Assembly (NCBI RefSeq): GCF_000150275.1
Contig: NW_002060953.1
Location: 1,714,465 to 1,778,464, forward strand
Length of the DNA stretch: 64,000 nt
Direction: 5' to 3'
Source: Trichoplax adhaerens
Taxonomy: Eukaryota; Animalia; Placozoa
This document shows, piece after piece, positions 15,994 to 60,503 of the stretch. How positions within the stretch are numbered: position 1 is the first letter of the stretch; every line of letters starts with the position of its first letter. The notes beneath the pieces were generated by a model. The model made no database searches. It was not told where the DNA came from and saw nothing but the letters and a program-made list of their open reading frames with translations. Made by a program: the position numbers and the translations under genes.

Positions 15994-17398
15994 TTACTTA
16001 ACACTCACGAAATCTTTCACAATATCTTTCCTGTCAATTGCAATAAGCACTTTTACTAAAGCTTCAGTGGTTGCTTCATTACCGGACATGTTATACCATT
16101 TGCTCAAGACCGCTTTTGCTCGATTGAAAACCACACTTTGCTCCTCTGCAATAACACCTACATCTATATTTTCGTTAAGCTTGCCCGCTAATCTAGTCCA
16201 GTCATTACCAATTTTGTCGGCGACAGTGTAAAAGTAGCCCTTCACATTAGCTAAAATTTCCATGAAATCATTTTGAAATAAGATTGGGTAAGATTAATTT
16301 CAATTAGATACTTTAGCGGTATTTCTAGAAGCAAGATTGAACAAATGTAGCTATCCCTTAAACTTGTCTAATTATATTATCAATCCTTATATGTCTTGAA
16401 TTTGCATGATTTCAGTGATAGAAGCTTAATACAGTAATTAATATTAAACATCGATACCAAAATCACTCAGATGTACTTGTTATCGTAATCTAACCTGACA
16501 ATGTTGATTCTACTTCCATCGGTGAGTCAACTGTATGAATAGAGATCATATTAAATTTAGATCACTTACTTGGAATTCATGTATGAACTGAACATTTTAC
16601 GTTGTATATTGCTTAAATTTATAGTAGCGCTATAACTTAATTTCCTTGAAAGAAATACTAACCAACATCTTGTCCATTAGGATCTATGATTAGTGAGATC
16701 GTTGATAGATTTTAATCCATATTTAACAAATCAGATCAGTATTAATAAATAGCTCATAGTATTTCTTTAGTAATTAGTATAATCTAGTATTATCAGGGCT
16801 ACAATAATCATTATACTTTCTATCAGTAGCTATCTCTAATATTACTTCCTTGCTTGCAAACAAGAAGGACAAGCTAGATTCAATAAATTAACTTACTTGT
16901 TCGGTGATCTTTCCGTACTAGCTTGATAGGCGTTCCTGCAATTATGAAATCAATTAGTTTAGGTATAGACCACTAATATATAAAATTGGCAATTCTAGTA
17001 ATAAATATAGATCAATTTAATTAGGAAGGGTTAGAGTTCACTTATCAATATAGCACTATTATATTATTCATGCAATAATATTCACTTCAATTGAAAGATT
17101 GTTTACCTTTAGCATCATCCTGTAGTTTAGCACCGAAAGATTTCACAACATTAACACCATTGCTTTTAAGTAAGTCACAAAACGTATAAAAATCCTCTTC
17201 TGCACGTTCTTCCATTAAGATTTCTAATAGCCTTCCATTCATATCTTCTGTGTGGGTTAAAGCTTTGATATCCGTCACTTGTCTTGTACTCAATATCTTT
17301 TTCATTTTGAGCCTAGTAAACAATTCTTGGATAGGAACAATTTTAAGGAATTGATCACTATTTTTATCCAATGCAGCCTGAATGTCTGGATTGTCCAT
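15994..17398 (-). CDS. CARD-Death domain two-domain adaptor (RAIDD/CRADD-like architecture)
   Basis: CARD exon 17398-17107 (MDNPDIQAALDKNSDQF...). Phase-1 linker micro-exons at 16935-16897, 16683-16663 and 16530-16495. DD exon 16250-15994 (YFYTVADKIGNDWTRLAGKL...LSKWYNMSGNEATTEALVKVLIAIDRKDIV). The 3' end is uncertain: an alternative donor gtgagt lies at 16008. Confidence 0.8.
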
Positions 17399-17584
17399 GC
17401 TGGATCTATAACGATTACGTTTACTCCACGAAATTTTATCTGAGGTGAATGAAATAGAATTATTAACCACGATCAATATCAGTATGTCGAAAGCAAGATA
17501 AAGTTCTACATCTTTTCACTTTATTTTAAACGATAGAATCTTGACTTACTTAACTATTATTCGTTTCATTAGAGAATATGATCA

Positions 17585-34217: not shown

Positions 34218-34526
34218 CTATGATGATCCACGCTTAGCATCGTGTTCAAGTTTAGTTCCAAAATCTTTAACCTTGTTATTGCGATTGATTTTTAGTAAGC
34301 CGCAGAATAGATCGAAATCTTTATCTCCGCGTGCCTCCATCAAAATTTCCAATAGATTTCCGTTCATATCTTCTGTGTGAATCAATAATTCAATATCCTT
34401 CACTTGCCAAGGACTTAAGATTTGCTTCTTTATCAGATCTTCAAGTAATTCTAGGATTGGAACAATTGTAATAAATTGTTCACTATTTTTGTCTAATGCA
34501 GCATAAATATCAGGATCTATTTCCAT
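34218..34526 (-). CDS. CARD-only protein (102 aa) or truncated CARD gene duplicate
   Basis: MEIDPDIYAALDKNSEQFITIVPILELL...HTEDMNGNLLEILMEARGDKDFDLFC is a close paralog of the 17398 CARD. The strong g|gtaa donor of its paralogs is replaced by c|gtggat, followed shortly by TAG. Confidence 0.75.
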   Translation of the reverse strand: MEIDPDIYAALDKNSEQFITIVPILELLEDLIKKQILSPWQVKDIELLIHTEDMNGNLLEILMEARGDKDFDLFCGLLKINRNNKVKDFGTKLEHDAKRGSS

Positions 34527-38968: not shown

Positions 38969-41900
38969 TCAATTTTGACTACATAAATGCTCTTCCACTA
39001 TCTCTGCAGCTAAAACATTTCCAATATTTCGCAGAATGCCAGTAACCTGCCAAATATCAGCCTTTGAACCCAAGTTTTGGTGCCACCTATCTAGCACTTT
39101 GAGAACTTTATCATAAGAGGTGGAGCTGTTCATCGTAATTTCATCAATATCTTTAACTTCCAGCCCTAGTTTCGTTGCAAAACGGAACAAGCATTTCTGA
39201 TCCAGTTTTTCGGCTATTATGTCGAAACACTTGATGAAGTTTACTGTTCAAATCAGCAAACAGTAGGTGTTAGTTTACCGTGGATTACTTGTAATCGTAT
39301 TTAGAATACACACTACACGTAAGTGTGGTCTAAAACAAAATATTAAAGTTATATCGAGCCATTAACGCAGTAAAGTATATCAACAAACAATTAGTAAGGA
39401 TTGCTAATTTTTACATTACATAAAATTAACTAATTTGGGCGATTATGGGGATAGAAAAAAAGTTGAGTATAAGGGCTGTTTAAATTTTGAAGTTTCTACT
39501 ATCTAAATCTGCAGCAGTGACTTTACAAAATTGCGTATTTTTATGTACACACTTTGATAACATCGCGTTACGAATACGTACACTACAATCGTTAAAACTA
39601 TCTTTAGGTCAAAAAGGAAAAAATTAAAGTTTTGATCCATTGCGTTGCAATACGTACCAGCCTTTTCTGAGCTCAGTTCTTCTTTCTTGATAATATCTGT
39701 TATTGATGATAGCGTTTATAAAAACAAAAGAAGAAAAATATGTTAGTCACAGTGTACGCTTTCTTTCCCAAAAGACCGGTATGTTTGCTGTATAGTTAGT
39801 AATTGCAAGGTTTACTAAGGTATCATAGGAATCCTATTAACATCAAAGAATCTTTATTACAGTGATCAACATTGTTTGAATATCTTTCAATTCGACGATG
39901 TTATCGTAAAGAACGTAAACAAATTCTATTATAGCAAAACCATAATGCACAGCAAATTGAGAAAATTCATTACTGCTACATGCTCTCCAAATAATAAAAT
40001 TGTAGTAAATACATCTAAACTTACAAATGCAAAAAGTTTCTTATATTATAAAGTTAACCTTTTGCATTCTTATCTACTGTAAATTCGGTATCAAAATTGT
40101 ATTAAACTAGAAATATCAGCCATGAAATCCTAATGTAACTTCATTATATTTCTGGCAGTTATCCTTGATTGATTTGATAACATTTAAGATAATTCAGACA
40201 AATTCGCAACAGACCTTTCTTTTTCATACCCCATTGATCAAGTGATGGCGAATCAAATATGAAATTACATTTTTGACAGCGGATTCTTCCCTTATGATCT
40301 TGATCTTCATGACTTAACTGACTTGTTAACTTTCCGCACATACAGCAAGTCACATACAGTGAGCAGTCAGCCGCCTGAAATCTAGGCATTCTATCGTTAA
40401 TAATTTTTTTAAAAGTATCCATAATGAAAAATTGTGGACGCTGAACTTCGATTGCTTGTCTAACTTTCAAGTCTTCATTCTCATTTAATATCTGATACGA
40501 GTATTCCAAACTAATGTAAGATTCGCTTTTTTTAATAATCATATAATAGTCGCTTTGACGTATATAATATTTTGCACATTTATAGCACAGTTTGACAAAT
40601 TGATTATTCCACTTTTTCATACAAGCCGCCACGAGGCAATAAAAGATGCCATCCGATATATATGGTATATTTGATTTATTAAATCCCATGAACAGTGCGC
40701 CGGAAACATACTCTTCTTCTTTATTCGTCGTAAAAGTCACATTAGGACGTAGTAAATATGGAACAATAAACTGACGAATGCAATTGCTAGAAGCAACATC
40801 GACCTTAATTTCACAAATAATATTATAGTGCTCCATAATTTTCAAAACACGTTCTTTATCATCATCTATCAAGTTAAAAGGACTTAATGCATTATCAAAT
40901 ACCCTTTTCGACACCTTGCCTGTAGTGTAAGCGATATTATAGTCTTCCAAAGTATCAGCGCTGGTGATAGTTTTACTTCCCTCTAATACAATTAAGGCAC
41001 GAAAAATCTTCACTAGCCATTCCACATTTGTAATGACAATATTTTCTTTTGTGATCTCCTCTCGGTAAAATAATAATTCACCAATATCATGCAAATAGAG
41101 TAACATATCGATTAATTCTTGATCATCTTCTACACTGTCCATATTTCTTTCGTATAGTCCGTAATCGATAGCTACTTCCTTGATTTCACTTGTAGTCATA
41201 ATATTCTTGATGCCATTCTCTTGGCTATGTAATAAAGTAGCCATGAAATACCACTTAGTAGGGATTGGCTTGTTAACGAAGGGCAAGGCTTGGGCAAATG
41301 TTTTTATGATATTGAGTAAATCTTCGCGACGTCGGAGACGCTCCTCAATCTTTGCAGAGGTGTTGTAATTTTCTTCTCCACAATCAAAAATAATTCGAGA
41401 TGAACATATGTTGGCTTTATATGATGGTAACTGCTCGACCAATTTGTGTGTAAATTCATCAAAGGTAGCTATAGGATCTTGCTTTCCTTCAATTTCATCA
41501 CCGTGTGTAGCTACTAAAATAACAACTGGTAACCTATATGTTTCAGCGGCTTGATTATTCCGTTTTACTGATATTTCAGTATTACTATTGCTGCAGCCTA
41601 TAACTGATGTGAGCCATTCCTTAATTCTGTCAAGATAAGTATCTCTAGCTTCTTTTCCTCCTCGAGCTTTCACCTTGTTTCCTATACTTTCGGCAATATT
41701 AAAGACTAGAATATAAAGGCTATTACCCGAAATAAAGGGTTGATGTGTTACATGATATACAGCTTGTCCACCGAAATCCCATAATTTTCCGTACTGATTT
41801 CGATCAATGTTGAATTTTTCCGTCAACCGCAGATGTTGTTTAAAAAATTTACGAATGATTTGACGACGCTGAGCTTTGGTTTCCTTGATATGGTCTGATA

Positions 41901-44040
41901 AATTATCATTATCATCACGGTTTGTTTCATTACGTGGAGAAGATAAAGATTCAATTTCATCAAAATTGGGCATGTCGATTTGTTTTTCTTTGTAATCTTC
42001 AACTGCACCTTGAATTTTTCTTTTTAAAACTTCAAAGTAATCTTGCTGCGTGCCATCATATATTTTAAAAGTAGAAAAGTCGACCATCTTACCTGTATTT
42101 TCTACAACCTGCGTAGCTGCTGAATGATATACTCGTATTTCTTCGATCAAAATTCTCATGATTGTAGTTTTGCCGACATTTTCCGGACCAATAAACATAA
42201 TTCGAATGAAATCACTCTGACATTGACCTCGCTTCAGGGCCTTTACGTAAGTAAAGTAATATTCTTTGATCTGCATAGCTGTAATTGATTAAATGTAAAA
42301 TAAATGCGTCTTATGATAACGTAATTTATTAAGCAAAGTGTTATATCTTTAATGCATTAGGGAATACAGTAGGACACAAGGCGATTACTTTTGCTACTTT
42401 ACGTCAATTCGACATAGTTCTTAACAAAGATTGTTACCTCATTTTTATAATTATCGTAATGATCAACTTTCAACTAAACTCAGGGTACCGAAATATAGCT
42501 GTTGCAATTATGCTCCTACCTTATTAAATTTTGCCGGTTAAAGATAGGCAAGTAATTCTCACAATATACAATTATAAGACTACCTCTGTGAAATTCTACT
42601 ATTCAATTACGATTGTAGCATTTAACGCAATAAAGATATCAGATTGAACTTACTATCTGGTATAGAAATTCTTCGACTGTATCTCGCTGCTGTAGTTTCA
42701 TCTTTTGACGATCCTGTAGTATAGGCATACATATTAAAAAAAACCGTTAACTCATGGTAGTTGATTACATAGGTAGTAATTTAATATTGCCATATTAAGA
42801 TCGTTACTAGCAATCCATCATAATCAAGCATATTGAGTAGGAAAATTGCTCTACCAATTTTTTCAGCAATGTCTTTACGGCCAATTTCATATAAAGCAAC
42901 CTTAAGTTTGTTTACTGTTGCACCTTGGCCATGCTTATCATACCAGCTATTGAGCGCAGCTACAGCTTTATCACACTGTGATTTACATTCAGAATCGATT
43001 AAACGGCTTGGGATTTCGTAGTCCAACGTTCTGCTTAATTTCATCCATTTAATCCCAATCATTTCAGCAACGACTGGAAAATAGGGTCTGGGATCTATAT
43101 TTAAATATATTCATTCATAAGGTGAGTACCATGATTGCTATATAATCTTCTAAATTGCAACTTTTACATCATTATCACTGCAAATAATATTATTATTCAT
43201 CCATCTAGGACAAACTTTAGCCTATTGATTTTGAGAAATATCTTTTATGAAATACTAGTTATCTTCCACAATTTATTAAAAATTGAGTTACTATTGATAT
43301 AAAAGGCAGGAAGACTAGCAATAGTTCTTATTAACTATAAGTATCCTTTAAAGAGGTGGATGTCGATGACCATATCTATTCCAACTATCTCAAATGACAT
43401 AGATTAGGAAAATAATTAGGCCATCGACACTTGTTTATGTTATCGTTAACAGATTTAGAGATATTTAAATTCAATCTGTTCCGTAACTATTTACTTGACT
43501 CCAACTAACCAAATGATGTGCTATAAGCTTAGTACTCACCTCTGTATCCAATCTCACTTTCATTACTGATATTCAAATGAGATGTAGCATCTAAAATAAT
43601 AGAACGGTTATTACAAAATCTTAGATGACATATCGATTTTAGTAAACTGCTTCCTTTTGCAATATCTGTATCATAGGCTTTGAAAAAGTTGTTATTCTAG
43701 GTGATTATGCAAGGTTCAAAATCTTACCAGCTGGCTGTTTGAAAGCTGCGATAGCTTCAGTTTCTAAGCGCTGACCGAATTTTTGAACATTTTTAGATCG
43801 ATGATTCTGTAAGGAAATGTAATACTGACGAAAATCTGCATCGGTCTTTGTTCTGAATAGAACTAGAAACTGGTGATGCCTCTCTCTTAGACTATCACAT
43901 TGTCTTAAGCTGGCAATTTCTTCCTTGGTAAATACGGTACTGGTTCTTAGATCGAATAAAAGTTCAAGCAATGGAGTCTCTTTGGCTATTCTTTGGAAAT
44001 TACTATCTAGGATAGCTCTAATCGTGTTAGATAATACCAT
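38969..44040 (-). CDS. Roco GTPase, about 1013 aa: CARD - DD - Roc - COR - Cys cluster - DD
   Basis: Exons 44040-43728 (CARD), 43590-43540, 43094-42855 (DD), 42713-42654, 42278-40215 (Roc-COR), 39696-39658 and 39243-38969 (DD). All introns are phase 1 GT-AG; total 3042 nt in frame. Roc motifs GPENVGKTT, LWDFGGQAVYHVTHQPF and ILVATHGD; COR start PIPTKW and LLYLHDIGELL; CCMC...CQKC. Confidence 0.9.
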
Positions 44041-44503
44041 TCTATATAATCGTAATATAGGCAACTGTAATAGTAAAAGAACTTGCAGGAATATTCAATA
44101 ACTACGCGTTTTGGTGTTCAATTGCCGTCTAAAAGCACTTTGAGGAAGCTCTGGTCATTTACTTATTTATTCAGTCATGATAATCCTTCCAAAGAGAATC
44201 CATCCATCCAGTTGCATCGATGGGCCCAATTTAGCTACCTATCGATAAAAGTCAAGATTTTGATGCTATTAACGCTTCTATTTTCGCCTTAATCAATCCT
44301 ATTTTCAGCATGGATTGAAATGGATCGATGTTACGATCATGATCAAGAATTCAATAGCGAAGAGTGTATCCTGATTGCATGCCTCCATGACTGTAATTTA
44401 GTCGATCATTGCAATTGTCTAGCTAAGATAGGAGTCTATTTACAGTATCATGCTACAAAATAGATAATCCTTTGATCGAATATGGGCTATAAGTAAAGTT
44501 AGC

Positions 44504-47105: not shown

Positions 47106-49369
47106 CCACTGCTGCTAAAAATTGAACCGTTAAACTATCCAGCAAGCAAGTTCGACATAGTCGATAGAAAGTTTATTTTACATGTTGTTAGAGCATGTAA
47201 AGTAGCCAACGATGCAGCAGATTGGACATTGCAGCAAGCATGATTAATTAGAAAGGTTGTTCAGTGTTTGGCCAACATTTGCTTGCTACTGTATGAAGAT
47301 AGCTGACAAGTAGGCAACGACTAATGTCGCTAAAATTGCTCAGACTGGAGGAAAAGTACAACATGAGCTGGTACTGTTTTTACTGTCCTCTTCTAATGCT
47401 GTATCAATGTCTTGAAATGCTGTGATTCGATTGGATTCAGTTTAGGCAATCGGAATTGGATTGGATTGAATTCGGGAAATCGATATGGAACCCTACCCCA
47501 GACTGTACACATCCACTTTAAACGCAATTTGCGAAAGAATGATACGTCCTACGTGAATTTGAAGGGCAGAATCATGTCAATGAACTCATTTTCTATCCTT
47601 CCGATATCAAATTTGTTCAAAGAAAGCTTCATTTTTGAGTGTTTATACTGTAAAATACTTTTCAAGAGTGCATTCTTGCAGTGTGTTCTTGTTGTGTTTC
47701 ACTTTCTATCGCTGTGCATGCTAACTTGACGGAATAGGAATGGCGGTATCTCGGCCTTCTCTAATAAGAGAAATACTCTTCCAAGTCCATTTCTCAGTTT
47801 ACAAGGCCAAATGGCAGTCGTGCTGTATTCTGGTCAGCGCTATGCTGCAAGATAGACCAGCAATACGATAAGTGGAACGAGAGCGATGACTGAGCAAGGA
47901 TGCTCTGCCGATGCATACAGTAATATATATGATATATATTCTCCCTGTTATATCTTATTTCAGAAGACTGTAGCCGTTGTCAAGTCGAAAACGATTAAGA
48001 TTGACTTCATAATCAACAGGAGTAGCCAGCCACGCCATTTAATGAGGGAATGCCTAGGGATTTGAACGATGGTATACGACAACTTTCATCCTATGAGGTC
48101 TTTAGTGTTTTTCTAAAAAAAAGGCAGCACTGTACAAAGACCATTTCTATATCGACTCTGCAGCATGTTAAATGGCATGCCTATTGCCACTTGGCCGCAA
48201 CGTTAGACATGGATCATGAGCATTGGCCATCGTAGCTAATGTAATTTTACGTACATGTCTTGAAATCAATTTTATGAACTGCAAAGCCACCACTCAACCT
48301 ATTCGATTCAACGCTTATCAGATATATATATACGTAGAAGAGCATGAATATGAAGAGTGGATGACATGGGCCAATAAAAGAAATACAGACAGAAGTTGCA
48401 AGTTGTTTTCTACACTAATCTATTTTGAAATGAAATGATCAACTCTGAAAATGATCGTACCCATCAATTTACTCTTTCAACCTCTACTCGTTGGTTCATA
48501 TAGCTTTCAACATCGGTTAGTAAGAAGGAATTCAACTTTTCATCGGCCCACCGTATTGGTAGAGGCCCCTTGTAGCGCTCAAATTGGACAAGAAGGAAAA
48601 CAATTTGAACTCAGTATAGAAGATAATTTAATAGACAAATCAAAATCGCTCTTAACAACAAATTGAATTCTATCGATTAATTAATCTCACTATCATCAAC
48701 GAGACATCATAACATCAAATTGGAACGGTACTAAAAGAAAAACTTATGTATGCGCTGCATTGATTATGGCCGATAGATAATTAAGAATAATCAATGGCAA
48801 AGGAAGAACATTTGTAAGTTTTTTTCACACAGTTGGCTAAAATCAATGCTATCATATTGAATATTACATGCCTGTCGGCTGTCATTGATTGATGATATAC
48901 GTATAGTATCATAGTAGTTGTAGAACTTGGAAATTGATCTAGTTTGCATCCTATTGGATTGACAGCTTGCAAGCAGTTTTAAACTTCCAGACCACTACTA
49001 CAGCATCATTAGCAGGGCTAGCAGCTAAGTCTTACATGAATATCGATCGTTCTTAATTTCTACTACTCCTTTCACATTTATACCTATCCCGACCTAATAC
49101 TTAACAGCGCTAGAACAGTACAATAACCGATTAGAATACTTAAAGTATACAAAGAGTTTTACGATAAGAGAACAAACTAAAAGACTGTAGTATAGCCTAG
49201 AGCCCTAGACATTGATTTAAAACGCTCATTAAAATAGCATCATGATAGCATGGGACTAAGGTACTCATCAATAGTCTAAACGTTAGAGGATAATATTAAT
49301 AACAGTAGAACAAAACTTGATAAATGCTGAACAAGCTTTTTTTATTTACTGTTGGTAGAATTAATTCGA

Positions 49370-51341
49370 TCACTTCCTCGAATTCTTTGCTTTTCTAATC
49401 GATTCGTATAATTCATTTAATTTCTTTTCTAATTCAGCCGTTGCTTGTTTATTGACGAGGATTTTGATATATAAATCTCCAGTAATATAGATATAGAAAT
49501 CTGTTCCTGTAGATGAGACTAACTCGCCCTGTGGTCTTATATCTTCAATAATGACTGCTACCATATCCTTTTTTTTGTCACTGGCGTAGCTGATTTCCGA
49601 ATAGCAATTCTTTGATTCGATATATTTCTTACTCATAAACGGCACAAACACCTACAGAAGATCATAGTGAAGTAATATCAAATTAGCTGTCAGAATGAAA
49701 CAATTATCCCAAGGTATTAATCTGCTTCTGATTTAGCCTACAAGTTCGGAAATTTAATAACGCTGTATAACACCTATAACTGCATCATATCCGAAGAAAA
49801 CCTAAATACCAAGCATCCATTCTTAAACATAGTGAATGAATATCAGCTTAAAATATTACTGTAAGAATTATCTTTACTTCAGTGTAACTTGAAATGAATA
49901 CTATTCAGCTAGTAAATATTTTCGTTATCATTATACCACCTTCAATTGATGCTATCTCAGAAGATTTATAATTAAAGTTATTCCTTTTACTGCTTCTACT
50001 TGAGAAAACGTAGCTGAAGAATGCAGTAAGTAAAAGTTAACTGAATAAATAAATATGAAGTCTTATTCGATATATCCTTTATTTGGTCATATAGTCGAAT
50101 AATATCTATTCCAATAGCATGGTAGTATGCTAAGTGGTTGCGATATTCAGCCGGTTATCTGCTATTATAGTGAAGCAGCAGATACAACTGCTCAATAAAA
50201 ATAAGTTTTTATACCCTAGACGCTAGGATAGCTTTAGAGATTTCCGGTAAAAGTTTCATTCCCCCACTGAGTTGCTCGTTGTCTATCCAACAGGTAATTC
50301 CTTTACTTTCCAGATATTTTTTTACATGAATGACGTCTTCCTTATTATCCCAGGAGTGGCTAAGAAATACATCTAACAAACAGATAATATCTCTTTTACT
50401 GGATACTCTCAAGCTAACGAAATATCCATATTTCTTAATCTCAGCCTTTATCGAATTCTATCAGTATACCGTAACTATATTTTGTTTGATCATTAACTGC
50501 AGATGCCTGATCAGTGGTATCCTTTCCAGCTAATAGTAAAAGAATGTGATAAGGAATACAGAAAGCATTTATTAAAACGAAAAATGGAAGTAAAAATATG
50601 AGCTAATTATAAGTGATGTACTGTCAATTTCTGGTTGAGTAGGTTAGTAATTTATCCTTGTAGCCAAAATTTGAATAAGAACACGTAGTCAATCGCTACA
50701 TAAGTCGATAATTCTATCACTTTATTCTACTTCCACAAGCTAATGAGAACAAAAAATACCGTAAAAGAAACTAAATTTATAGGTAAACAGATACGGTACA
50801 GTATGCATTCACGCAATAGCTGACAAGATCACTTATATTAACATTTTATATCTGTGTAAATAAATGTAAATTAATTATTGTACTAACCTTCATGAGAAAT
50901 GGGAGCTACTGACGTAACTGGGGTGGTTACAACTATATCAAAAAGAAAATTACCATATTCAGAGGAAATAGGGCTACCAAACGGCCTATTCTGTATCATT
51001 AAGCTTTTCAGAATCATCTTACCAGGACTAGGTTGGACACCTGAAATTGCATTCTTAGCTTGATTTTCCAATAAATTTCCTAATTCTTGGGCATTGTCAG
51101 TATCGTGATTCTTAAGTGCTTCACAAAATTTTAAAAAATCTCTATCTCCTCTTTTCTCCAAAATTTTATATAATTCAAAATTTTTTTCGTTATCATCCTG
51201 GATTCTTCTTAGTTTCGATGCTTCAGAACTGGACATAACACCATCAGCTGCTAGTTCATTAAGGATGTCATTTGTTGGCGTGTCATTACATATTCGCTTC
51301 ATGTTTTTTGTCAATACCTTTTTAATTTCTTTAGACAACAT
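49370..51341 (-). CDS. CARD-TIR protein, about 287 aa (TIR_2/SARM-like TIR)
   Basis: Exons 51341-51023 (CARD), 50932-50888, 50529-50470, 50372-50215 and 49651-49370 join in frame (864 nt). TIR: YDVFLSHSWDNKEDV...GITCWIDNEQLSGG..L.PEISKAILASRVFVPFMSKKYIESKNCYSEISYA. Confidence 0.88.
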
Positions 51342-55646: not shown

Positions 55647-56678
55647 CTAATAATCTTGGATGATTACTGGTCTATTTTCATCATTAAAAGTAGAGCTAAC
55701 TGTTTCTCGAAATCTTACGCGGCATATTTGTCGAAAAATTTTTAGGATATCTTTCGCCGCTCGATTTACTTAACTATCGAATTTTAACATTATCAGTGGA
55801 TTAATAATTGATACCGCTGCTGTAGTCGCAAACGAATAGTAGATAAATACGTATAATGCGCTATTCCGATTTCTGATTTGACGTTGCGGTTGTTGAGTAA
55901 AAGCCAGAGATAAGGTTGTTGCAAAATAAGGAACTGTAATAAGAAAATCAACCGATGTTGTAATGAGAAATGTTCGCATTAAAGCTCTTCCACCGTCACT
56001 CGCTTCTGTCCATCCTACTGAATTGATTTGCCTCGGTCGAACATATCTAACCACATAATGAATGATCTTCCAGTAAACTGCAATTAAAAATATTGTTGGG
56101 ATAATGTAAATTATGCTAGTATGTATTATTAAATAAACTGATATGTTAAAGCTGACGCGGGGAATATCGAAAAAATCGGGCTCATCTTTATAAATATCAA
56201 TAAAATATAGTAAAGGCAAGGATATGCTCACAGCAATAATGGCCACCGCAATCTGTCCTATAAGTGTGATATAATTTCTAATGATTGAACAACATCGTAC
56301 AGTAGGTGAAGAGATGAGAATATAATGGCTAATAGCTAAAGCATAAGCATAATATTAGTGCCCAAACAGCACTAGAAGTCGAAAGTGTGAAAGTCACAAT
56401 TCTACAAAACCATCAACCCGTCAACAAATTAAATATATTTCCAATGCTATAGGTAGAATACATAACTAATGAAAAATTAGCTACGATATCCGATACAGTA
56501 GCAATAAAAATTAAACGATAAGTACGCTTATAAAAGTATCGGTGATGAAATATTATAATCGGTAAAAATGTATTAATACAAAGGGCCATGCCGCAATTAA
56601 AACTGCGACGCTGGAAACCAAAGCATTTAAATTTTTATCATTTGCATTACTTGAACTATTGACAACAAGAGATTCCAT
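55647..56678 (-). pseudogene. Intronless rhodopsin-family (class A) GPCR pseudogene
   Basis: Starts MESLVVNSSSNANDK; TM5 YIIPTIFLIAVYWKII, TM6 FLITVPYF, TM7 SIINPLI. Frameshifts in the TM1-TM3 part and a premature TAA at 55770 before the helix-8/C-tail. Confidence 0.8.
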
Positions 56679-59639: not shown

Positions 59640-60503
59640 TCTATATTATACCATTTAATCGTGTGTCCCAAATATGACACAATGTTGCATGCGAAATTAC
59701 ACTTTTCTTCTTTAACACTAAATCCATATTGTCGCTATCGATCGAATACCAGTTCCAGGTGCTGCAAATGTTCCTTCCAATTTGCACTATAGAACATAAT
59801 GTCATCCAAGTAGACACTAGCAACTCCCGGCAAATCTTTTAGCACTGCATCCATCAAACGCTGGAAAGTAGCTGGAGCACTGTGTAATCCAATCGGCATA
59901 ACTTTAAATTCGTACAACCCAAACGGCGTTATAAATGCTGTTGTCTTTTGTGAATTCGGAGGTAAGGGAATTTGCCCATACCCCTTCGACTGATCAATAG
60001 TTGATATAAACTTCGCTTGCCGAATACGATCCAAAATTTCTGTTATCTTCGGTATTGGGTAGGCATCCATTTCGGTCACGGCATTCACTCTGCGAAAATC
60101 CACACACGGGCGATAAGTGCCATTCTTCTTCCTAACTAGCATCAATGGAGAAGCCCAAGGACTATTTGAGGGTTGAATCACATTCAGCTGCAACATTTTT
60201 TGGATTTCTTTTCTTACTTGCTCTCTTTTCGCGTAAGATAGCGGGTACGGCTTCATCTAATCGGTTCTGATTTCAGTAGTCGAATATTGTGCTCCACGAT
60301 CTCCGTCCGCCCAAGCTTCTTGGTAAACAATTCTTTAAATTTATTAATTAACTGTTGCAATTGCTTACCCTGGTTTTCACTTAATTGTTGCGGTACCTTT
60401 TCTTCTTTATGGAAATCTTCTAAACTTGCATTCTCATCTTCGATCTGCACGATCTGGACTGTCTGCATCTCGGATGATTTTATCAATTTCTTCAACAAAT
60501 TGA
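59640..60503 (-). mobile_element. Decayed Ty3/Gypsy LTR-retrotransposon pol fragment (reverse transcriptase)
   Basis: PSNSPWASPLMLVRKKNGTYRPCVDFRRVN, DAYPIP, KTTAFITPFGLYEFKVMP.GL..APATFQRLMD, VYLDDI, then after a stop EKC..YLGH. Frameshift at about 60255 and stop at 59735. Confidence 0.93.

What the first reader, a model, noticed from the sequence alone, without database searches (positions are those of the whole stretch)
49370..51341. CARD-TIR fusion whose TIR keeps the catalytic-type glutamate
Seen: an in-frame CARD, linker and TIR, with SKNCYSEISYA (Glu codon 49595-49597) in the alphaC position and a WID..QLSGG BB-loop. Known: SARM1, plant and bacterial enzymatic TIRs use a Glu in this (W/C)xxE position and are activated by clustering; the MyD88 adaptor is DD-TIR, not CARD-TIR. 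Inference: a CARD-polymerisation-activated NADase or signal-producing effector rather than a scaffold adaptor.
Basis: partly seen in the sequence, partly recalled or inferred. Interest (0 to 1): 0.82.

Follow-up and report, generated by a model that had tools for sequence, protein, structure and literature searches.

The report
Placozoan CARD-TIR gene, already annotated
This is a real five-exon Trichoplax gene that joins a CARD to a TIR domain; it was already annotated and published as "MyD88-like", and its conserved glutamate permits an NAD-cleaving role but does not demonstrate one.

Summary
On the minus strand, 51341-49370, five GT-AG exons encode CARD, a disordered linker and a TIR domain. 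The gene is Trichoplax adhaerens TRIADDRAFT_59582 (XP_002115656.1, UniProt B3S621). Its Trichoplax sp. H2 ortholog is TrispH2_011522.

The architecture is not new. Kamm et al. 2019 (PMC6321704) reported two placozoan "MyD88-like" TIR+CARD proteins.

The glutamate (codon 49597-49595) aligns with the catalytic Glu of Cat1, Roq1, L6 and C. elegans TIR-1/SARM1. It is invariant in six paralogs and present in 452 of 478 related TIR domains. However, more than 70% of all TIRs carry this Glu, including non-enzymatic TLR1/2/6/10. The aromatic residue four positions upstream (the W of WxxxE), which cyclase and some NADase activities need, is Asn here and His in H2.

The fold comparison does not separate enzyme from scaffold TIRs. 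Sequence similarity leans towards bacterial and plant enzyme-type TIRs.

New context: the next gene is CARD-Death-Roc-COR. A paralogous TIR is fused in one open frame to the same NTPase type. This places the TIR as an output module of death-fold NTPases.

Enzyme (about 0.42) and scaffold (about 0.40) readings remain nearly tied. Interest is moderate.

The parts
51023..51341 (-). Exon 1: start codon and CARD. The H2 model starts at ATG 51341; the H1 model starts at the in-frame ATG 51302.
   Evidence: Pfam CARD 28.3 bits. Exon mapping, with donor GTAAGA after 51023, phase 1. In-frame stop 9 nt upstream of 51341.
50888..50932 (-). Exon 2: 45-nt linker exon, phase 1 to 1.
   Evidence: Present in the public models P0002 and P0151 and mapped. 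Predicted disordered, with pLDDT below 50 for residues 88-123.
50470..50529 (-). Exon 3: 60-nt linker exon, phase 1 to 1.
   Evidence: Mapped. A homologous mini-exon (68% identity over 19 aa) is kept in the pseudogene paralog L028.
50215..50372 (-). Exon 4: first half of the TIR, covering beta-A, alpha-A, beta-B, BB loop and alpha-B.
   Evidence: TIR_2 40 bits, profile positions 1-52. Best PDB sequence matches are PdTIR, Cat1 and AbTir. Acceptor TGTTAG before 50372 and donor GTATAA after 50215.
49370..49651 (-). Exon 5: second half of the TIR (beta-C to alpha-E), a C-terminal helix, and stop codon TGA at 49372-49370.
   Evidence: TIR_2 22.7 bits, profile positions 54-101. Six further relatives in the genome. 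Model helix 252-271.
49595..49597 (-). Glu codon (E200 of P0002) in helix alpha-C, the position of the catalytic Glu in enzymatic TIRs.
   Evidence: Aligned with the Glu of Cat1, AtTIR, Roq1 (E86) and L6 and of C. elegans TIR-1. Invariant in A1 and A3. Present in 452 of 478 related domains.
49607..49609 (-). Asn codon four residues before the Glu, where enzymatic TIRs carry the Trp of WxxxE.
   Evidence: Aligned with Roq1 W82. It is His in the H2 ortholog. Across 478 related domains the position reads Y 285, N 73, F 27, W 13.
49341..49346 (-). AATAAA polyadenylation-type signal 24 nt after the stop codon.
   Evidence: Read directly from the sequence.
40159..44064 (-). Next gene downstream on the same strand and a candidate partner. 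It has a CARD-like exon (43705-44064), a Death-domain exon (42781-43062) and a Roc-COR NTPase exon (40159-42276).
   Evidence: Death 45.9 bits and CARD 14.9 bits, the latter weak. Roc 42.2 bits; COR-A 35.1 bits, just under its 35.3 cut-off. The CARD-like exon is related to this gene's CARD at E 2.3e-9. The H2 model of 1016 aa carries Roc, COR-A (weak) and two Death hits in the same synteny.

Best explanation
The locus is a five-exon placozoan gene, Trichoplax adhaerens TRIADDRAFT_59582. It encodes an N-terminal CARD, a disordered linker of about 35 residues and a C-terminal TIR domain.

Proposed mechanism:
1. The CARD docks by CARD-CARD contacts onto oligomerised, death-fold-bearing NTPase sensors. 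The CARD-Death-Roc-COR gene next door is the first candidate. The many Apaf-1-like paralogs of placozoans are others.
2. Docking brings the TIR domains together.
3. Once clustered, the TIR most likely hydrolyses NAD+ to ADP-ribose and nicotinamide. The TIR belongs to a bacterial/plant-like clade that keeps the alpha-C Glu. A cyclic ADPR signal is unlikely because the aromatic residue needed for cyclisation is missing.

Shown: the gene structure, the domains, the alignment of the Glu, its conservation, the neighbouring gene, and the TIR-Roc fusion in a paralog.

Inferred: CARD-driven clustering, the identity of the partner, and any catalysis.
For: Gene and domains.

Glu position: it aligns with the catalytic Glu of Cat1, AtTIR, Roq1 and L6 and of C. 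elegans TIR-1/SARM1.

Glu conservation: it is invariant in six paralogs at 36-47% identity. It is one of only two invariant columns among 23 placozoan, amphioxus, chytrid, jellyfish and environmental relatives. It is present in 452 of 478 related TIR domains.

Sequence affinity: a single-sequence search of the PDB finds only bacterial and plant enzyme-type TIRs and no MyD88, TLR or IL-1R at E up to 10. With a profile, Cat1, Roq1 and TIR-1 rank above MyD88, although a TLR15/TLR2 entry ranks second. The BB loop aligns with the Gly-containing loop of Cat1 and PdTIR.

Output-module position: paralog L033/P0003 has this TIR type fused in one open frame to a Roc-type NTPase. That NTPase is 46% identical (E 3e-25) to the NTPase of the neighbouring CARD-Death-Roc-COR gene.

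Precedents from the literature:
- In bacteria, Death-like domains are fused to TIR effectors and paired with Death-like-STAND NTPases (PMC8195603).
- MyD88, MAL, TRIF and TRAM all lack the Glu (PMC11745336).
- No canonical TLR and no transmembrane TIR-only protein was found in Trichoplax (PMC6321704).
Against: - The Glu is present in more than 70% of all TIRs and more than 90% of non-enzymatic TLR1/2/6/10 (PMC7075850).
- Dictyostelium TirB and TirD keep the Glu and were inactive in vitro (10.64898/2026.04.30.722052).
- The residue at -4 is Asn. L6 W131A and ROQ1 W82A lose NADase activity, and SARM1 W638A and AbTir W204A are weakened (10.1101/2022.05.07.491051).
- That position and position -1 differ between H1 and H2. 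The gene shows 17 nonsynonymous against 3 synonymous differences, giving dN/dS of about 1.4 overall and about 1.0 in the TIR. There is no sign of a tightly constrained pocket.
- Fold comparison ties enzyme and scaffold TIRs.
- The profile search also scores a TLR15/TLR2 entry at 53.7 bits and MyD88 at 36 bits, above human SARM1 at 32 bits.
- I have no transcript, interaction or activity data.
Confidence: 0.42

Rival explanations
1. The protein is a scaffold adaptor, the published "MyD88-like" reading. The TIR binds other TIR proteins of the same family, for example the TIR-Roc NTPase. The CARD then recruits CARD-caspases or CARD-Death adaptors. The signal passes by proximity alone, without catalysis.
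For: - The protein consists of two homotypic interaction domains and nothing else.
- Kamm et al. read it this way (PMC6321704).
- A family TIR sits on an NTPase sensor and could serve as the upstream TIR partner.
- The closest CARD paralogs are CARD+Death adaptors resembling CRADD.
- At least 60 related CARD exons exist in the genome.
- The model aligns with MyD88 filament structures at Z 15.9, as well as it does with SARM1.
- The aromatic residue of WxxxE is absent.
- Residues next to the Glu vary between H1 and H2, as expected for a specificity surface.
- The Glu is also kept in scaffold TLR1/2/6/10 (PMC7075850).
Against: - All four human scaffold adaptors lack the Glu (PMC11745336). Here it is invariant over deep paralogy and in bacterial relatives.
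- The best sequence matches are enzyme-type TIRs.
- No TLR or IL-1R type receptor is known in placozoans (PMC6321704).
Confidence: 0.4
2. The TIR is an enzyme but NAD+ is not its main substrate. One possibility is 2',3'-cNMP synthetase or nuclease activity on RNA or DNA, as reported for plant TIRs. Another is a base-exchange or other nucleotide reaction.
For: - The Cys three residues before the Glu is nearly invariant, in 437 of 478 domains.
- The motif resembles the plant S-x-W-C-x-x-E motif.
- In flax L7 the Trp equivalent to L6 W131 contacts 2',3'-cAMP (10.1101/2022.05.07.491051).
- That plant synthetase activity depends on this Cys is my own recollection, not checked here.
Against: The same Cys is present in TLRs. 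No test was possible. The Trp that contacts the product in L7 is absent here.
Confidence: 0.08
3. The gene is a young, weakly constrained member of a birth-and-death family, drifting towards loss of function.
For: - dN/dS between H1 and H2 is about 1.4, with 17 nonsynonymous and 3 synonymous differences. Exons diverge at 2.3% and introns at 1.4%.
- The closest paralog, about 27 kb away (67% identity), carries stop codons and a frameshift.
Against: - The reading frame, all eight splice sites and all family-invariant residues are intact in both species.
- With only 20 substitutions, the ratio cannot be told apart from 1 or from positive selection, which is common in immune genes.
- The family as a whole is conserved at 36-47% identity.
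Confidence: 0.08

Closest known systems
MyD88 (Death domain + TIR adaptor of TLR/IL-1R signalling)
   Same: An N-terminal death-fold domain, a linker and a C-terminal TIR, of similar size (274-290 aa). The TIR fold aligns at Z 15.9. Published as "MyD88-like" (PMC6321704).
   Different: The death-fold domain is a CARD, not a Death domain. The alpha-C Glu is present, whereas MyD88 lacks it (PMC11745336, PMC7075850). Single-sequence search finds no MyD88 at E up to 10. No TLR or IL-1R receptors are known in the host.
SARM1 / C. elegans TIR-1 (animal NAD+ hydrolase TIR)
   Same: The Glu aligns with the TIR-1 catalytic Glu in a profile alignment (49.8 bits). The fold matches the SARM1 TIR at Z 16.1. 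Activation by clustering is the proposed logic in both.
   Different: There are no ARM or SAM domains, and clustering would come from a CARD. The Trp four residues before the Glu is Asn. The human SARM1 TIR scores lower (32 bits) than MyD88 (36 bits) with the family profile.
Bacterial and plant enzymatic TIRs (Cat1, PdTIR, AbTir; Roq1, L6, RUN1, RPP1)
   Same: These are the best sequence matches in the PDB. They share the beta-A motif, a Gly-containing BB loop and the S-x-x-C-x-x-E alpha-C motif. A paralog has the TIR fused to an NTPase, as in plant TIR-NLRs.
   Different: The aromatic residue of WxxxE is replaced by Asn. The NTPase is Roc-COR, not NB-ARC. The host is an animal.
Bacterial Death-like-domain systems (effector-associated-domain principle, Kaur et al. 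2021, PMC8195603)
   Same: A death-fold domain is fused to a TIR effector, and a second death-fold domain is fused to an NTPase. The two are encoded side by side. Effectors are either fused directly or joined through the shared adaptor domain.
   Different: Those systems are prokaryotic, with bDLD3 and STAND NTPases. Here the genes are eukaryotic and spliced, with a canonical CARD and a Roc-COR NTPase. Adjacency in a eukaryote is weaker evidence of coupling.

Membership tests
TIR domain superfamily (Pfam PF13676 / PF01582) | Profile match above the curated cut-off and a flavodoxin-like five-strand TIR fold. | tested here: met
   TIR_2 74.3 bits (cut-off 28) and TIR 43.1 bits (cut-off 21.3) on P0002. 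The model has pLDDT 85-92 in the TIR, with Z 14-16.6 to about 50 TIR structures.
CARD (Pfam PF00619) | Profile match above the cut-off and a six-helix death fold. | tested here: met
   28.3 bits on the exon and 26 bits on P0002, against a cut-off of 23.9. Six helices are predicted in residues 2-87. Weak PDB matches to CED-3 and to the Apaf-1 CARD.
MyD88 orthologs | An N-terminal Death domain (PF00531), not a CARD. | tested here: not met
   The N-terminal domain matches CARD. There is no Death hit.
MyD88 orthologs | A TIR of the animal adaptor type, lacking the alpha-C Glu. | tested here: not met
   The Glu is present and invariant. MyD88 lacks it (PMC11745336; fewer than 10% in the MyD88 group, PMC7075850). 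There is no MyD88 hit by phmmer.
Enzymatic (NAD+-cleaving) TIRs | A catalytic Glu in helix alpha-C. | tested here: met
   E200 aligns with the Glu of Cat1, Roq1 (E86), L6, AtTIR and TIR-1. This feature is necessary but not sufficient (PMC7075850).
Enzymatic (NAD+-cleaving) TIRs | An aromatic residue four positions before the Glu (WxxxE), required for cyclisation and, in L6 and ROQ1, for activity. | tested here: not met
   Asn in H1 and His in H2. The requirement is taken from 10.1101/2022.05.07.491051.
Enzymatic (NAD+-cleaving) TIRs | An intact Gly-containing BB loop. | tested here: met
   The SGG stretch after beta-B aligns with the PGG/PGD loops of Cat1 and PdTIR. This is judged by alignment only, and the model confidence in the loop is low (pLDDT about 59).
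Enzymatic (NAD+-cleaving) TIRs | Glu-dependent NAD+ consumption on oligomerisation. | not testable with these tools
   Needs biochemistry.
SARM1 family | The ARM-SAM-SAM-TIR architecture. | tested here: not met
   Only CARD and TIR are found.

The most novel reading that the evidence does not exclude
Placozoans run a eukaryotic version of the bacterial effector-associated-domain logic. Death-fold-bearing Roc-COR (and Apaf-1-like) NTPase sensors oligomerise and nucleate CARD assemblies. These cluster a CARD-TIR enzyme, which destroys NAD+ or releases ADPR and so kills or alarms the cell. This would be a plant TIR-NLR split into two proteins. It would also be the first animal TIR NADase outside SARM1 to be switched on by a death-fold filament.
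Probability: 0.3. Interest if true: 0.75.

Novelty: new member of a known kind. Interest (0 to 1): 0.42.

Why it matters
If the TIR is catalytic, MyD88-type architecture (death fold + TIR) would have an enzymatic relative in one of the earliest-branching animals. That would link the bacterial and plant mode of immunity, in which a clustered TIR burns NAD+, with animal death-fold signalling. It would also offer a simple system of two or three genes for testing how the scaffold mode arose.

If the TIR is only a scaffold, the gene is one more shuffled adaptor in the large placozoan death-fold repertoire.

In either case the gene and its architecture are already in the databases and the literature. 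The new elements are the Glu/Asn motif analysis, the neighbouring CARD-Death-Roc-COR gene, and the TIR-Roc fusion paralog.

Tried and rejected
- The word search with the 152-aa CARD ORF found nothing, because of its length filter. The word search with P0002 residues 120-274 found only P0002 itself.
- phmmer of the TIR-C exon alone against the PDB gave only chance matches. A paralog profile was needed.
- AlphaFold2 without an alignment was useless, with pLDDT 41. With the 23-row alignment A3 it reached 75.
- The fold searches do not discriminate enzyme from scaffold TIRs, so the proposed superposition on SARM1 cannot settle the question.
- I looked for a Trichoplax SARM1 to use as an internal reference. 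L001 and L002 are other TIR proteins: an ANK/ARM-TIR-SAM protein with Gln at the Glu position, and a TIR with the Glu. I dropped this route.
- My first guess for the TIR-N acceptor site (50405) was wrong. The public models use 50372.
- The look-up of encoding contigs found no record for P0002 but did find the H2 contig.
- Literature searches for "CARD-TIR" and for the gene's accession numbers returned nothing.
I rewrote it to work from references only.
Joined-protein steps used only the public model P0002 returned by the search. dN/dS was computed exon by exon on whole codons, skipping split codons.

Full report
**Source of the window.** The window is G000:C1404:1714465-1778464 of a 105.6-Mb assembly in 1414 contigs, with about 31% G+C. 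Exact look-up of the encoded protein identifies the organism as Trichoplax adhaerens, a placozoan. It is not human sequence.

**Observation.** Scanned by reference, exon by exon, they give:
- CARD, 28.3 bits (cut-off 23.9).
- TIR_2, 40 bits, profile positions 1-52.
- TIR_2, 22.7 bits, profile positions 54-101.

A profile of the last exon and its paralogs, searched against 1.84 billion representative proteins, returned P0002 (274 aa). P0002 is the public model of this very gene: TRIADDRAFT_59582, XP_002115656.1, UniProt B3S621. The Trichoplax sp. H2 ortholog is TrispH2_011522 (P0151, 290 aa). P0002 scores TIR_2 74.3, TIR 43.1 and CARD 26 bits.

Mapping both models on the window gives five exons: 51341-51023, 50932-50888, 50529-50470, 50372-50215 and 49651-49370. 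All have GT-AG borders, in phases 1,1,1,0. An in-frame stop lies just upstream of the first ATG, and an AATAAA signal follows the TGA stop.

Every step that needed the joined protein used the public model returned by the search, and all other searches were run exon by exon.

The correction is that two short linker exons lie between CARD and TIR.

**Is the architecture new? No.** Kamm et al. [quoted passage not shown] CARD" in Trichoplax sp. H2 (PMC6321704). In H2 the two models with CARD+TIR are P0151 and P0004 (TrispH2_008615). These are very probably the two proteins meant, although the figure with the locus tags is not held as text.

**The family in this genome.** The TIR-C exon has seven copies:
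- This gene.
- A pseudogene about 27 kb away with stop codons and a frameshift. It still keeps a homolog of the 60-nt linker exon.
- A second CARD-TIR on C1376, with CARD at 37 bits.
- A third CARD-TIR on C1246/C1398 (P0154).
- A copy on C1398 lying behind CARD and Death exons.
- A copy on C986 (L033).

The CARD exon has at least 60 relatives. Five of them are in this window, all on the minus strand. The nearest CARD paralogs are followed by Death-domain exons, which makes them CARD+Death adaptors.

**The glutamate.** It is invariant in six intact paralogs that are only 36-47% identical to this gene. In a 23-row alignment it is one of only two invariant columns. That alignment includes an amphioxus protein, a chytrid protein, a jellyfish protein and environmental sequences. 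It is present in 452 of 478 TIR domains found in the 155 retrieved proteins, many of which are bacterial multi-TIR/WD40 proteins.

In pairwise HMMER alignments E200 pairs with the Glu of the W-C-x-x-E motif of Cat1, AtTIR, Roq1 (E86) and L6. With the family profile it pairs with the Glu of the H-K-E-L stretch of C. elegans TIR-1, the SARM1 ortholog.

**How much does the glutamate tell us? Little on its own.**
[quoted passage not shown] It occurs in more than 90% of TLR1/2/6/10 and in fewer than 10% of MyD88 and TIRAP. They state that its frequency does not correlate with reported activity (PMC7075850).
- Dictyostelium TirB and TirD keep the Glu, yet only TirC cleaved NAD+ (10.64898/2026.04.30.722052).
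- The same preprint shows that the TIR_2 HMM hits nearly every TIR clade.
- On the other side, all four human scaffold adaptors lack the Glu (PMC11745336). Its strict retention in a MyD88-shaped protein is thus a real difference from MyD88.

**The missing tryptophan.** Four residues before the Glu, enzymatic TIRs carry an aromatic residue: AbTir W204, SARM1 W638, L6 W131 and ROQ1 W82. Manik et al. report the following (10.1101/2022.05.07.491051):
- L6 W131A and ROQ1 W82A lose NADase activity.
- AbTir W204A and SARM1 W638A are weakened.

Here the position is Asn and aligns with ROQ1 W82. In the related domains it is Y 285, N 73, F 27 and W 13. In the H2 ortholog it is His. This speaks against a cADPR-isomer-producing "signal" enzyme. 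It leaves open either a plain hydrolase or no activity at all.

**Sequence and fold affinity.**
- phmmer of P0002 against the PDB finds only bacterial and plant TIRs of the enzymatic kind: Cat1 at 37.9 bits, then AtTIR, Roq1, L6, PdTIR, RPP1, RPV1, RUN1, SNC1 and AbTir. It finds no MyD88, MAL, TLR, IL-1R or SARM1 at E up to 10.
- With the 23-row profile all TIRs appear. The scores are Cat1 66.4, a TLR15/TLR2 entry 53.7, Roq1 53.6, TIR-1 49.8, PdTIR 43.6, AbTir 41.9, TLR6 38.3, MyD88 36.1 and human SARM1 about 32.
- The AlphaFold2 model built on that alignment has a mean pLDDT of 75, reaching 85-92 in the TIR.
- Foldseek ranks SARM1, plant TIRs and AbTir first.
- VIA-align ties Hydra TRR-2, RUN1, SARM1, MyD88, TLR2 and IL-1RAcP at Z 15-16.6.

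The fold is a generic TIR and does not decide between enzyme and scaffold. The sequence leans towards the enzyme-type clades without excluding the animal receptor type.

**Genomic context (new here).** The next gene on the same strand has three recognisable exons:
- A CARD-like exon, 43705-44064.
- A Death-domain exon, 42781-43062, at 45.9 bits.
- A 705-codon Roc/COR NTPase exon, 40159-42276.

The H2 annotation has the same order: a 7tm_1 receptor, the CARD-TIR gene, then a 1016-aa protein with Roc, COR-A and two Death hits.

On contig C986 the TIR-C exon of a family paralog runs on, in one open frame without any stop, into a P-loop NTPase. That NTPase is 46% identical (E 3e-25) to the start of the neighbour's Roc domain. 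This TIR type therefore occurs both fused directly to that NTPase and separately, joined to a CARD, beside an NTPase that carries a CARD.

This is the pattern Kaur et al. described for bacterial Death-like domains. There, effectors including TIR are either fused to the NTPase or linked through a shared adaptor domain, with the pairs encoded side by side (PMC8195603). The pattern places the TIR at the output or relay end of death-fold NTPase switches. It fits both an enzyme effector and a TIR-TIR relay.

**Selection.** Between H1 and H2 the exons differ at 20 of 861 sites, 17 nonsynonymous and 3 synonymous. The introns differ at 15 of 1105 sites. dN/dS is about 1.4 overall, 1.9 in the CARD and 1.0 in the TIR. 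The calculation was done exon by exon on whole codons. Two of the TIR changes lie at -4 and -1 from the Glu. With so few substitutions, neutrality, relaxed constraint and diversifying selection cannot be told apart. Frames and splice sites are intact in both species.

**Verdict.** The gene and its CARD-linker-TIR build are real, but they are already annotated and published. It is not a MyD88 ortholog. The Glu is in the catalytic position and is strictly conserved, but that is the default state of TIR domains. The companion aromatic residue is missing, and the pocket-side residues vary between sister species.

I rate the readings as follows:
- CARD-recruited NAD+ hydrolase (non-cyclising): about 0.42.
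- Pure scaffold adaptor: about 0.40.
- Another catalytic activity: about 0.08.
- Drift towards loss of function: about 0.08.

Biochemistry with a Glu-to-Ala control under forced clustering would decide between them.

Noticed in passing
window 40159-44064 (-): A CARD-like exon, a Death-domain exon and a 705-codon Roc/COR NTPase exon form the gene next to the CARD-TIR. Its H2 ortholog is a 1016-aa protein with Roc, COR-A and two Death hits.
   Followed up: partly
L033:2956-4179 (G000:C986): A TIR of the same family is fused, in a single open frame, to a Roc-type P-loop NTPase. That NTPase is 46% identical to the window's Roc domain. The contig ends inside the gene.
   Followed up: partly
L028:4907-5944 (G000:C1404:1790906-1791943), about 27 kb beyond the window end: The closest paralog of the TIR exons (67% identity) carries stop codons and a frameshift, so it is a pseudogene. 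It still keeps a homolog of the 60-nt linker exon.
   Followed up: partly
window 513-869, 17087-17476, 34218-34526, 43705-44064, 50883-51341 (all -): Five CARD exons lie on the same strand within 64 kb. They are part of a larger CARD-gene cluster on C1404 (about 1.70-1.97 Mb), and the genome holds at least 60 related CARD exons.
   Followed up: partly
L034:8947-9336 + 7502-7786, L034:4503-4892 + 3059-3343, L035:2836-3150 + 1723-2085: The nearest CARD paralogs are each followed, 0.7-1.2 kb downstream, by a Death-domain exon. These are tandem CARD+Death adaptors resembling CRADD/RAIDD. L034 also holds a run of N about 2.3 kb long between two copies.
   Followed up: partly
window 59735-60256 (-): An ORF with a reverse-transcriptase domain (RVT_1, 97 bits), probably a retroelement fragment.
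   Followed up: no
window 55770-56246 (-): A rhodopsin-type GPCR exon (7tm_1, 31.7 bits). A 7tm_1 gene occupies the same position upstream of the CARD-TIR on the H2 contig.
   Followed up: no
L029 (G000:C1246) versus L030 (G000:C1398:118000-127999): The 10.2-kb contig C1246 carries a TIR-N exon whose translation is identical, and a near-identical TIR-C exon, to a region of C1398. This is probably an unmerged haplotype or a very recent duplicate.
   Followed up: no
G000: C1399:924577-926271, C1409:2333754-2335683, C1407:1884243-1886413 and others: About eight loci match LSDAT_euk, the SLOG-type N-terminal domain of TRPM channels. These are possible ADPR-responsive channels if the TIR releases ADPR. 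Whether any of them is TRPM2-like was not checked.
   Followed up: no
P0007, P0008, P0012 (retrieved proteins, not in the window): The strongest non-placozoan matches to the TIR-C profile are 1300-2300-aa proteins with 3-7 tandem TIR_2 domains plus WD40 repeats. One is from a Candidatus Parabeggiatoa MAG. They share the S-x-Y-C-x-x-E motif.
   Followed up: partly
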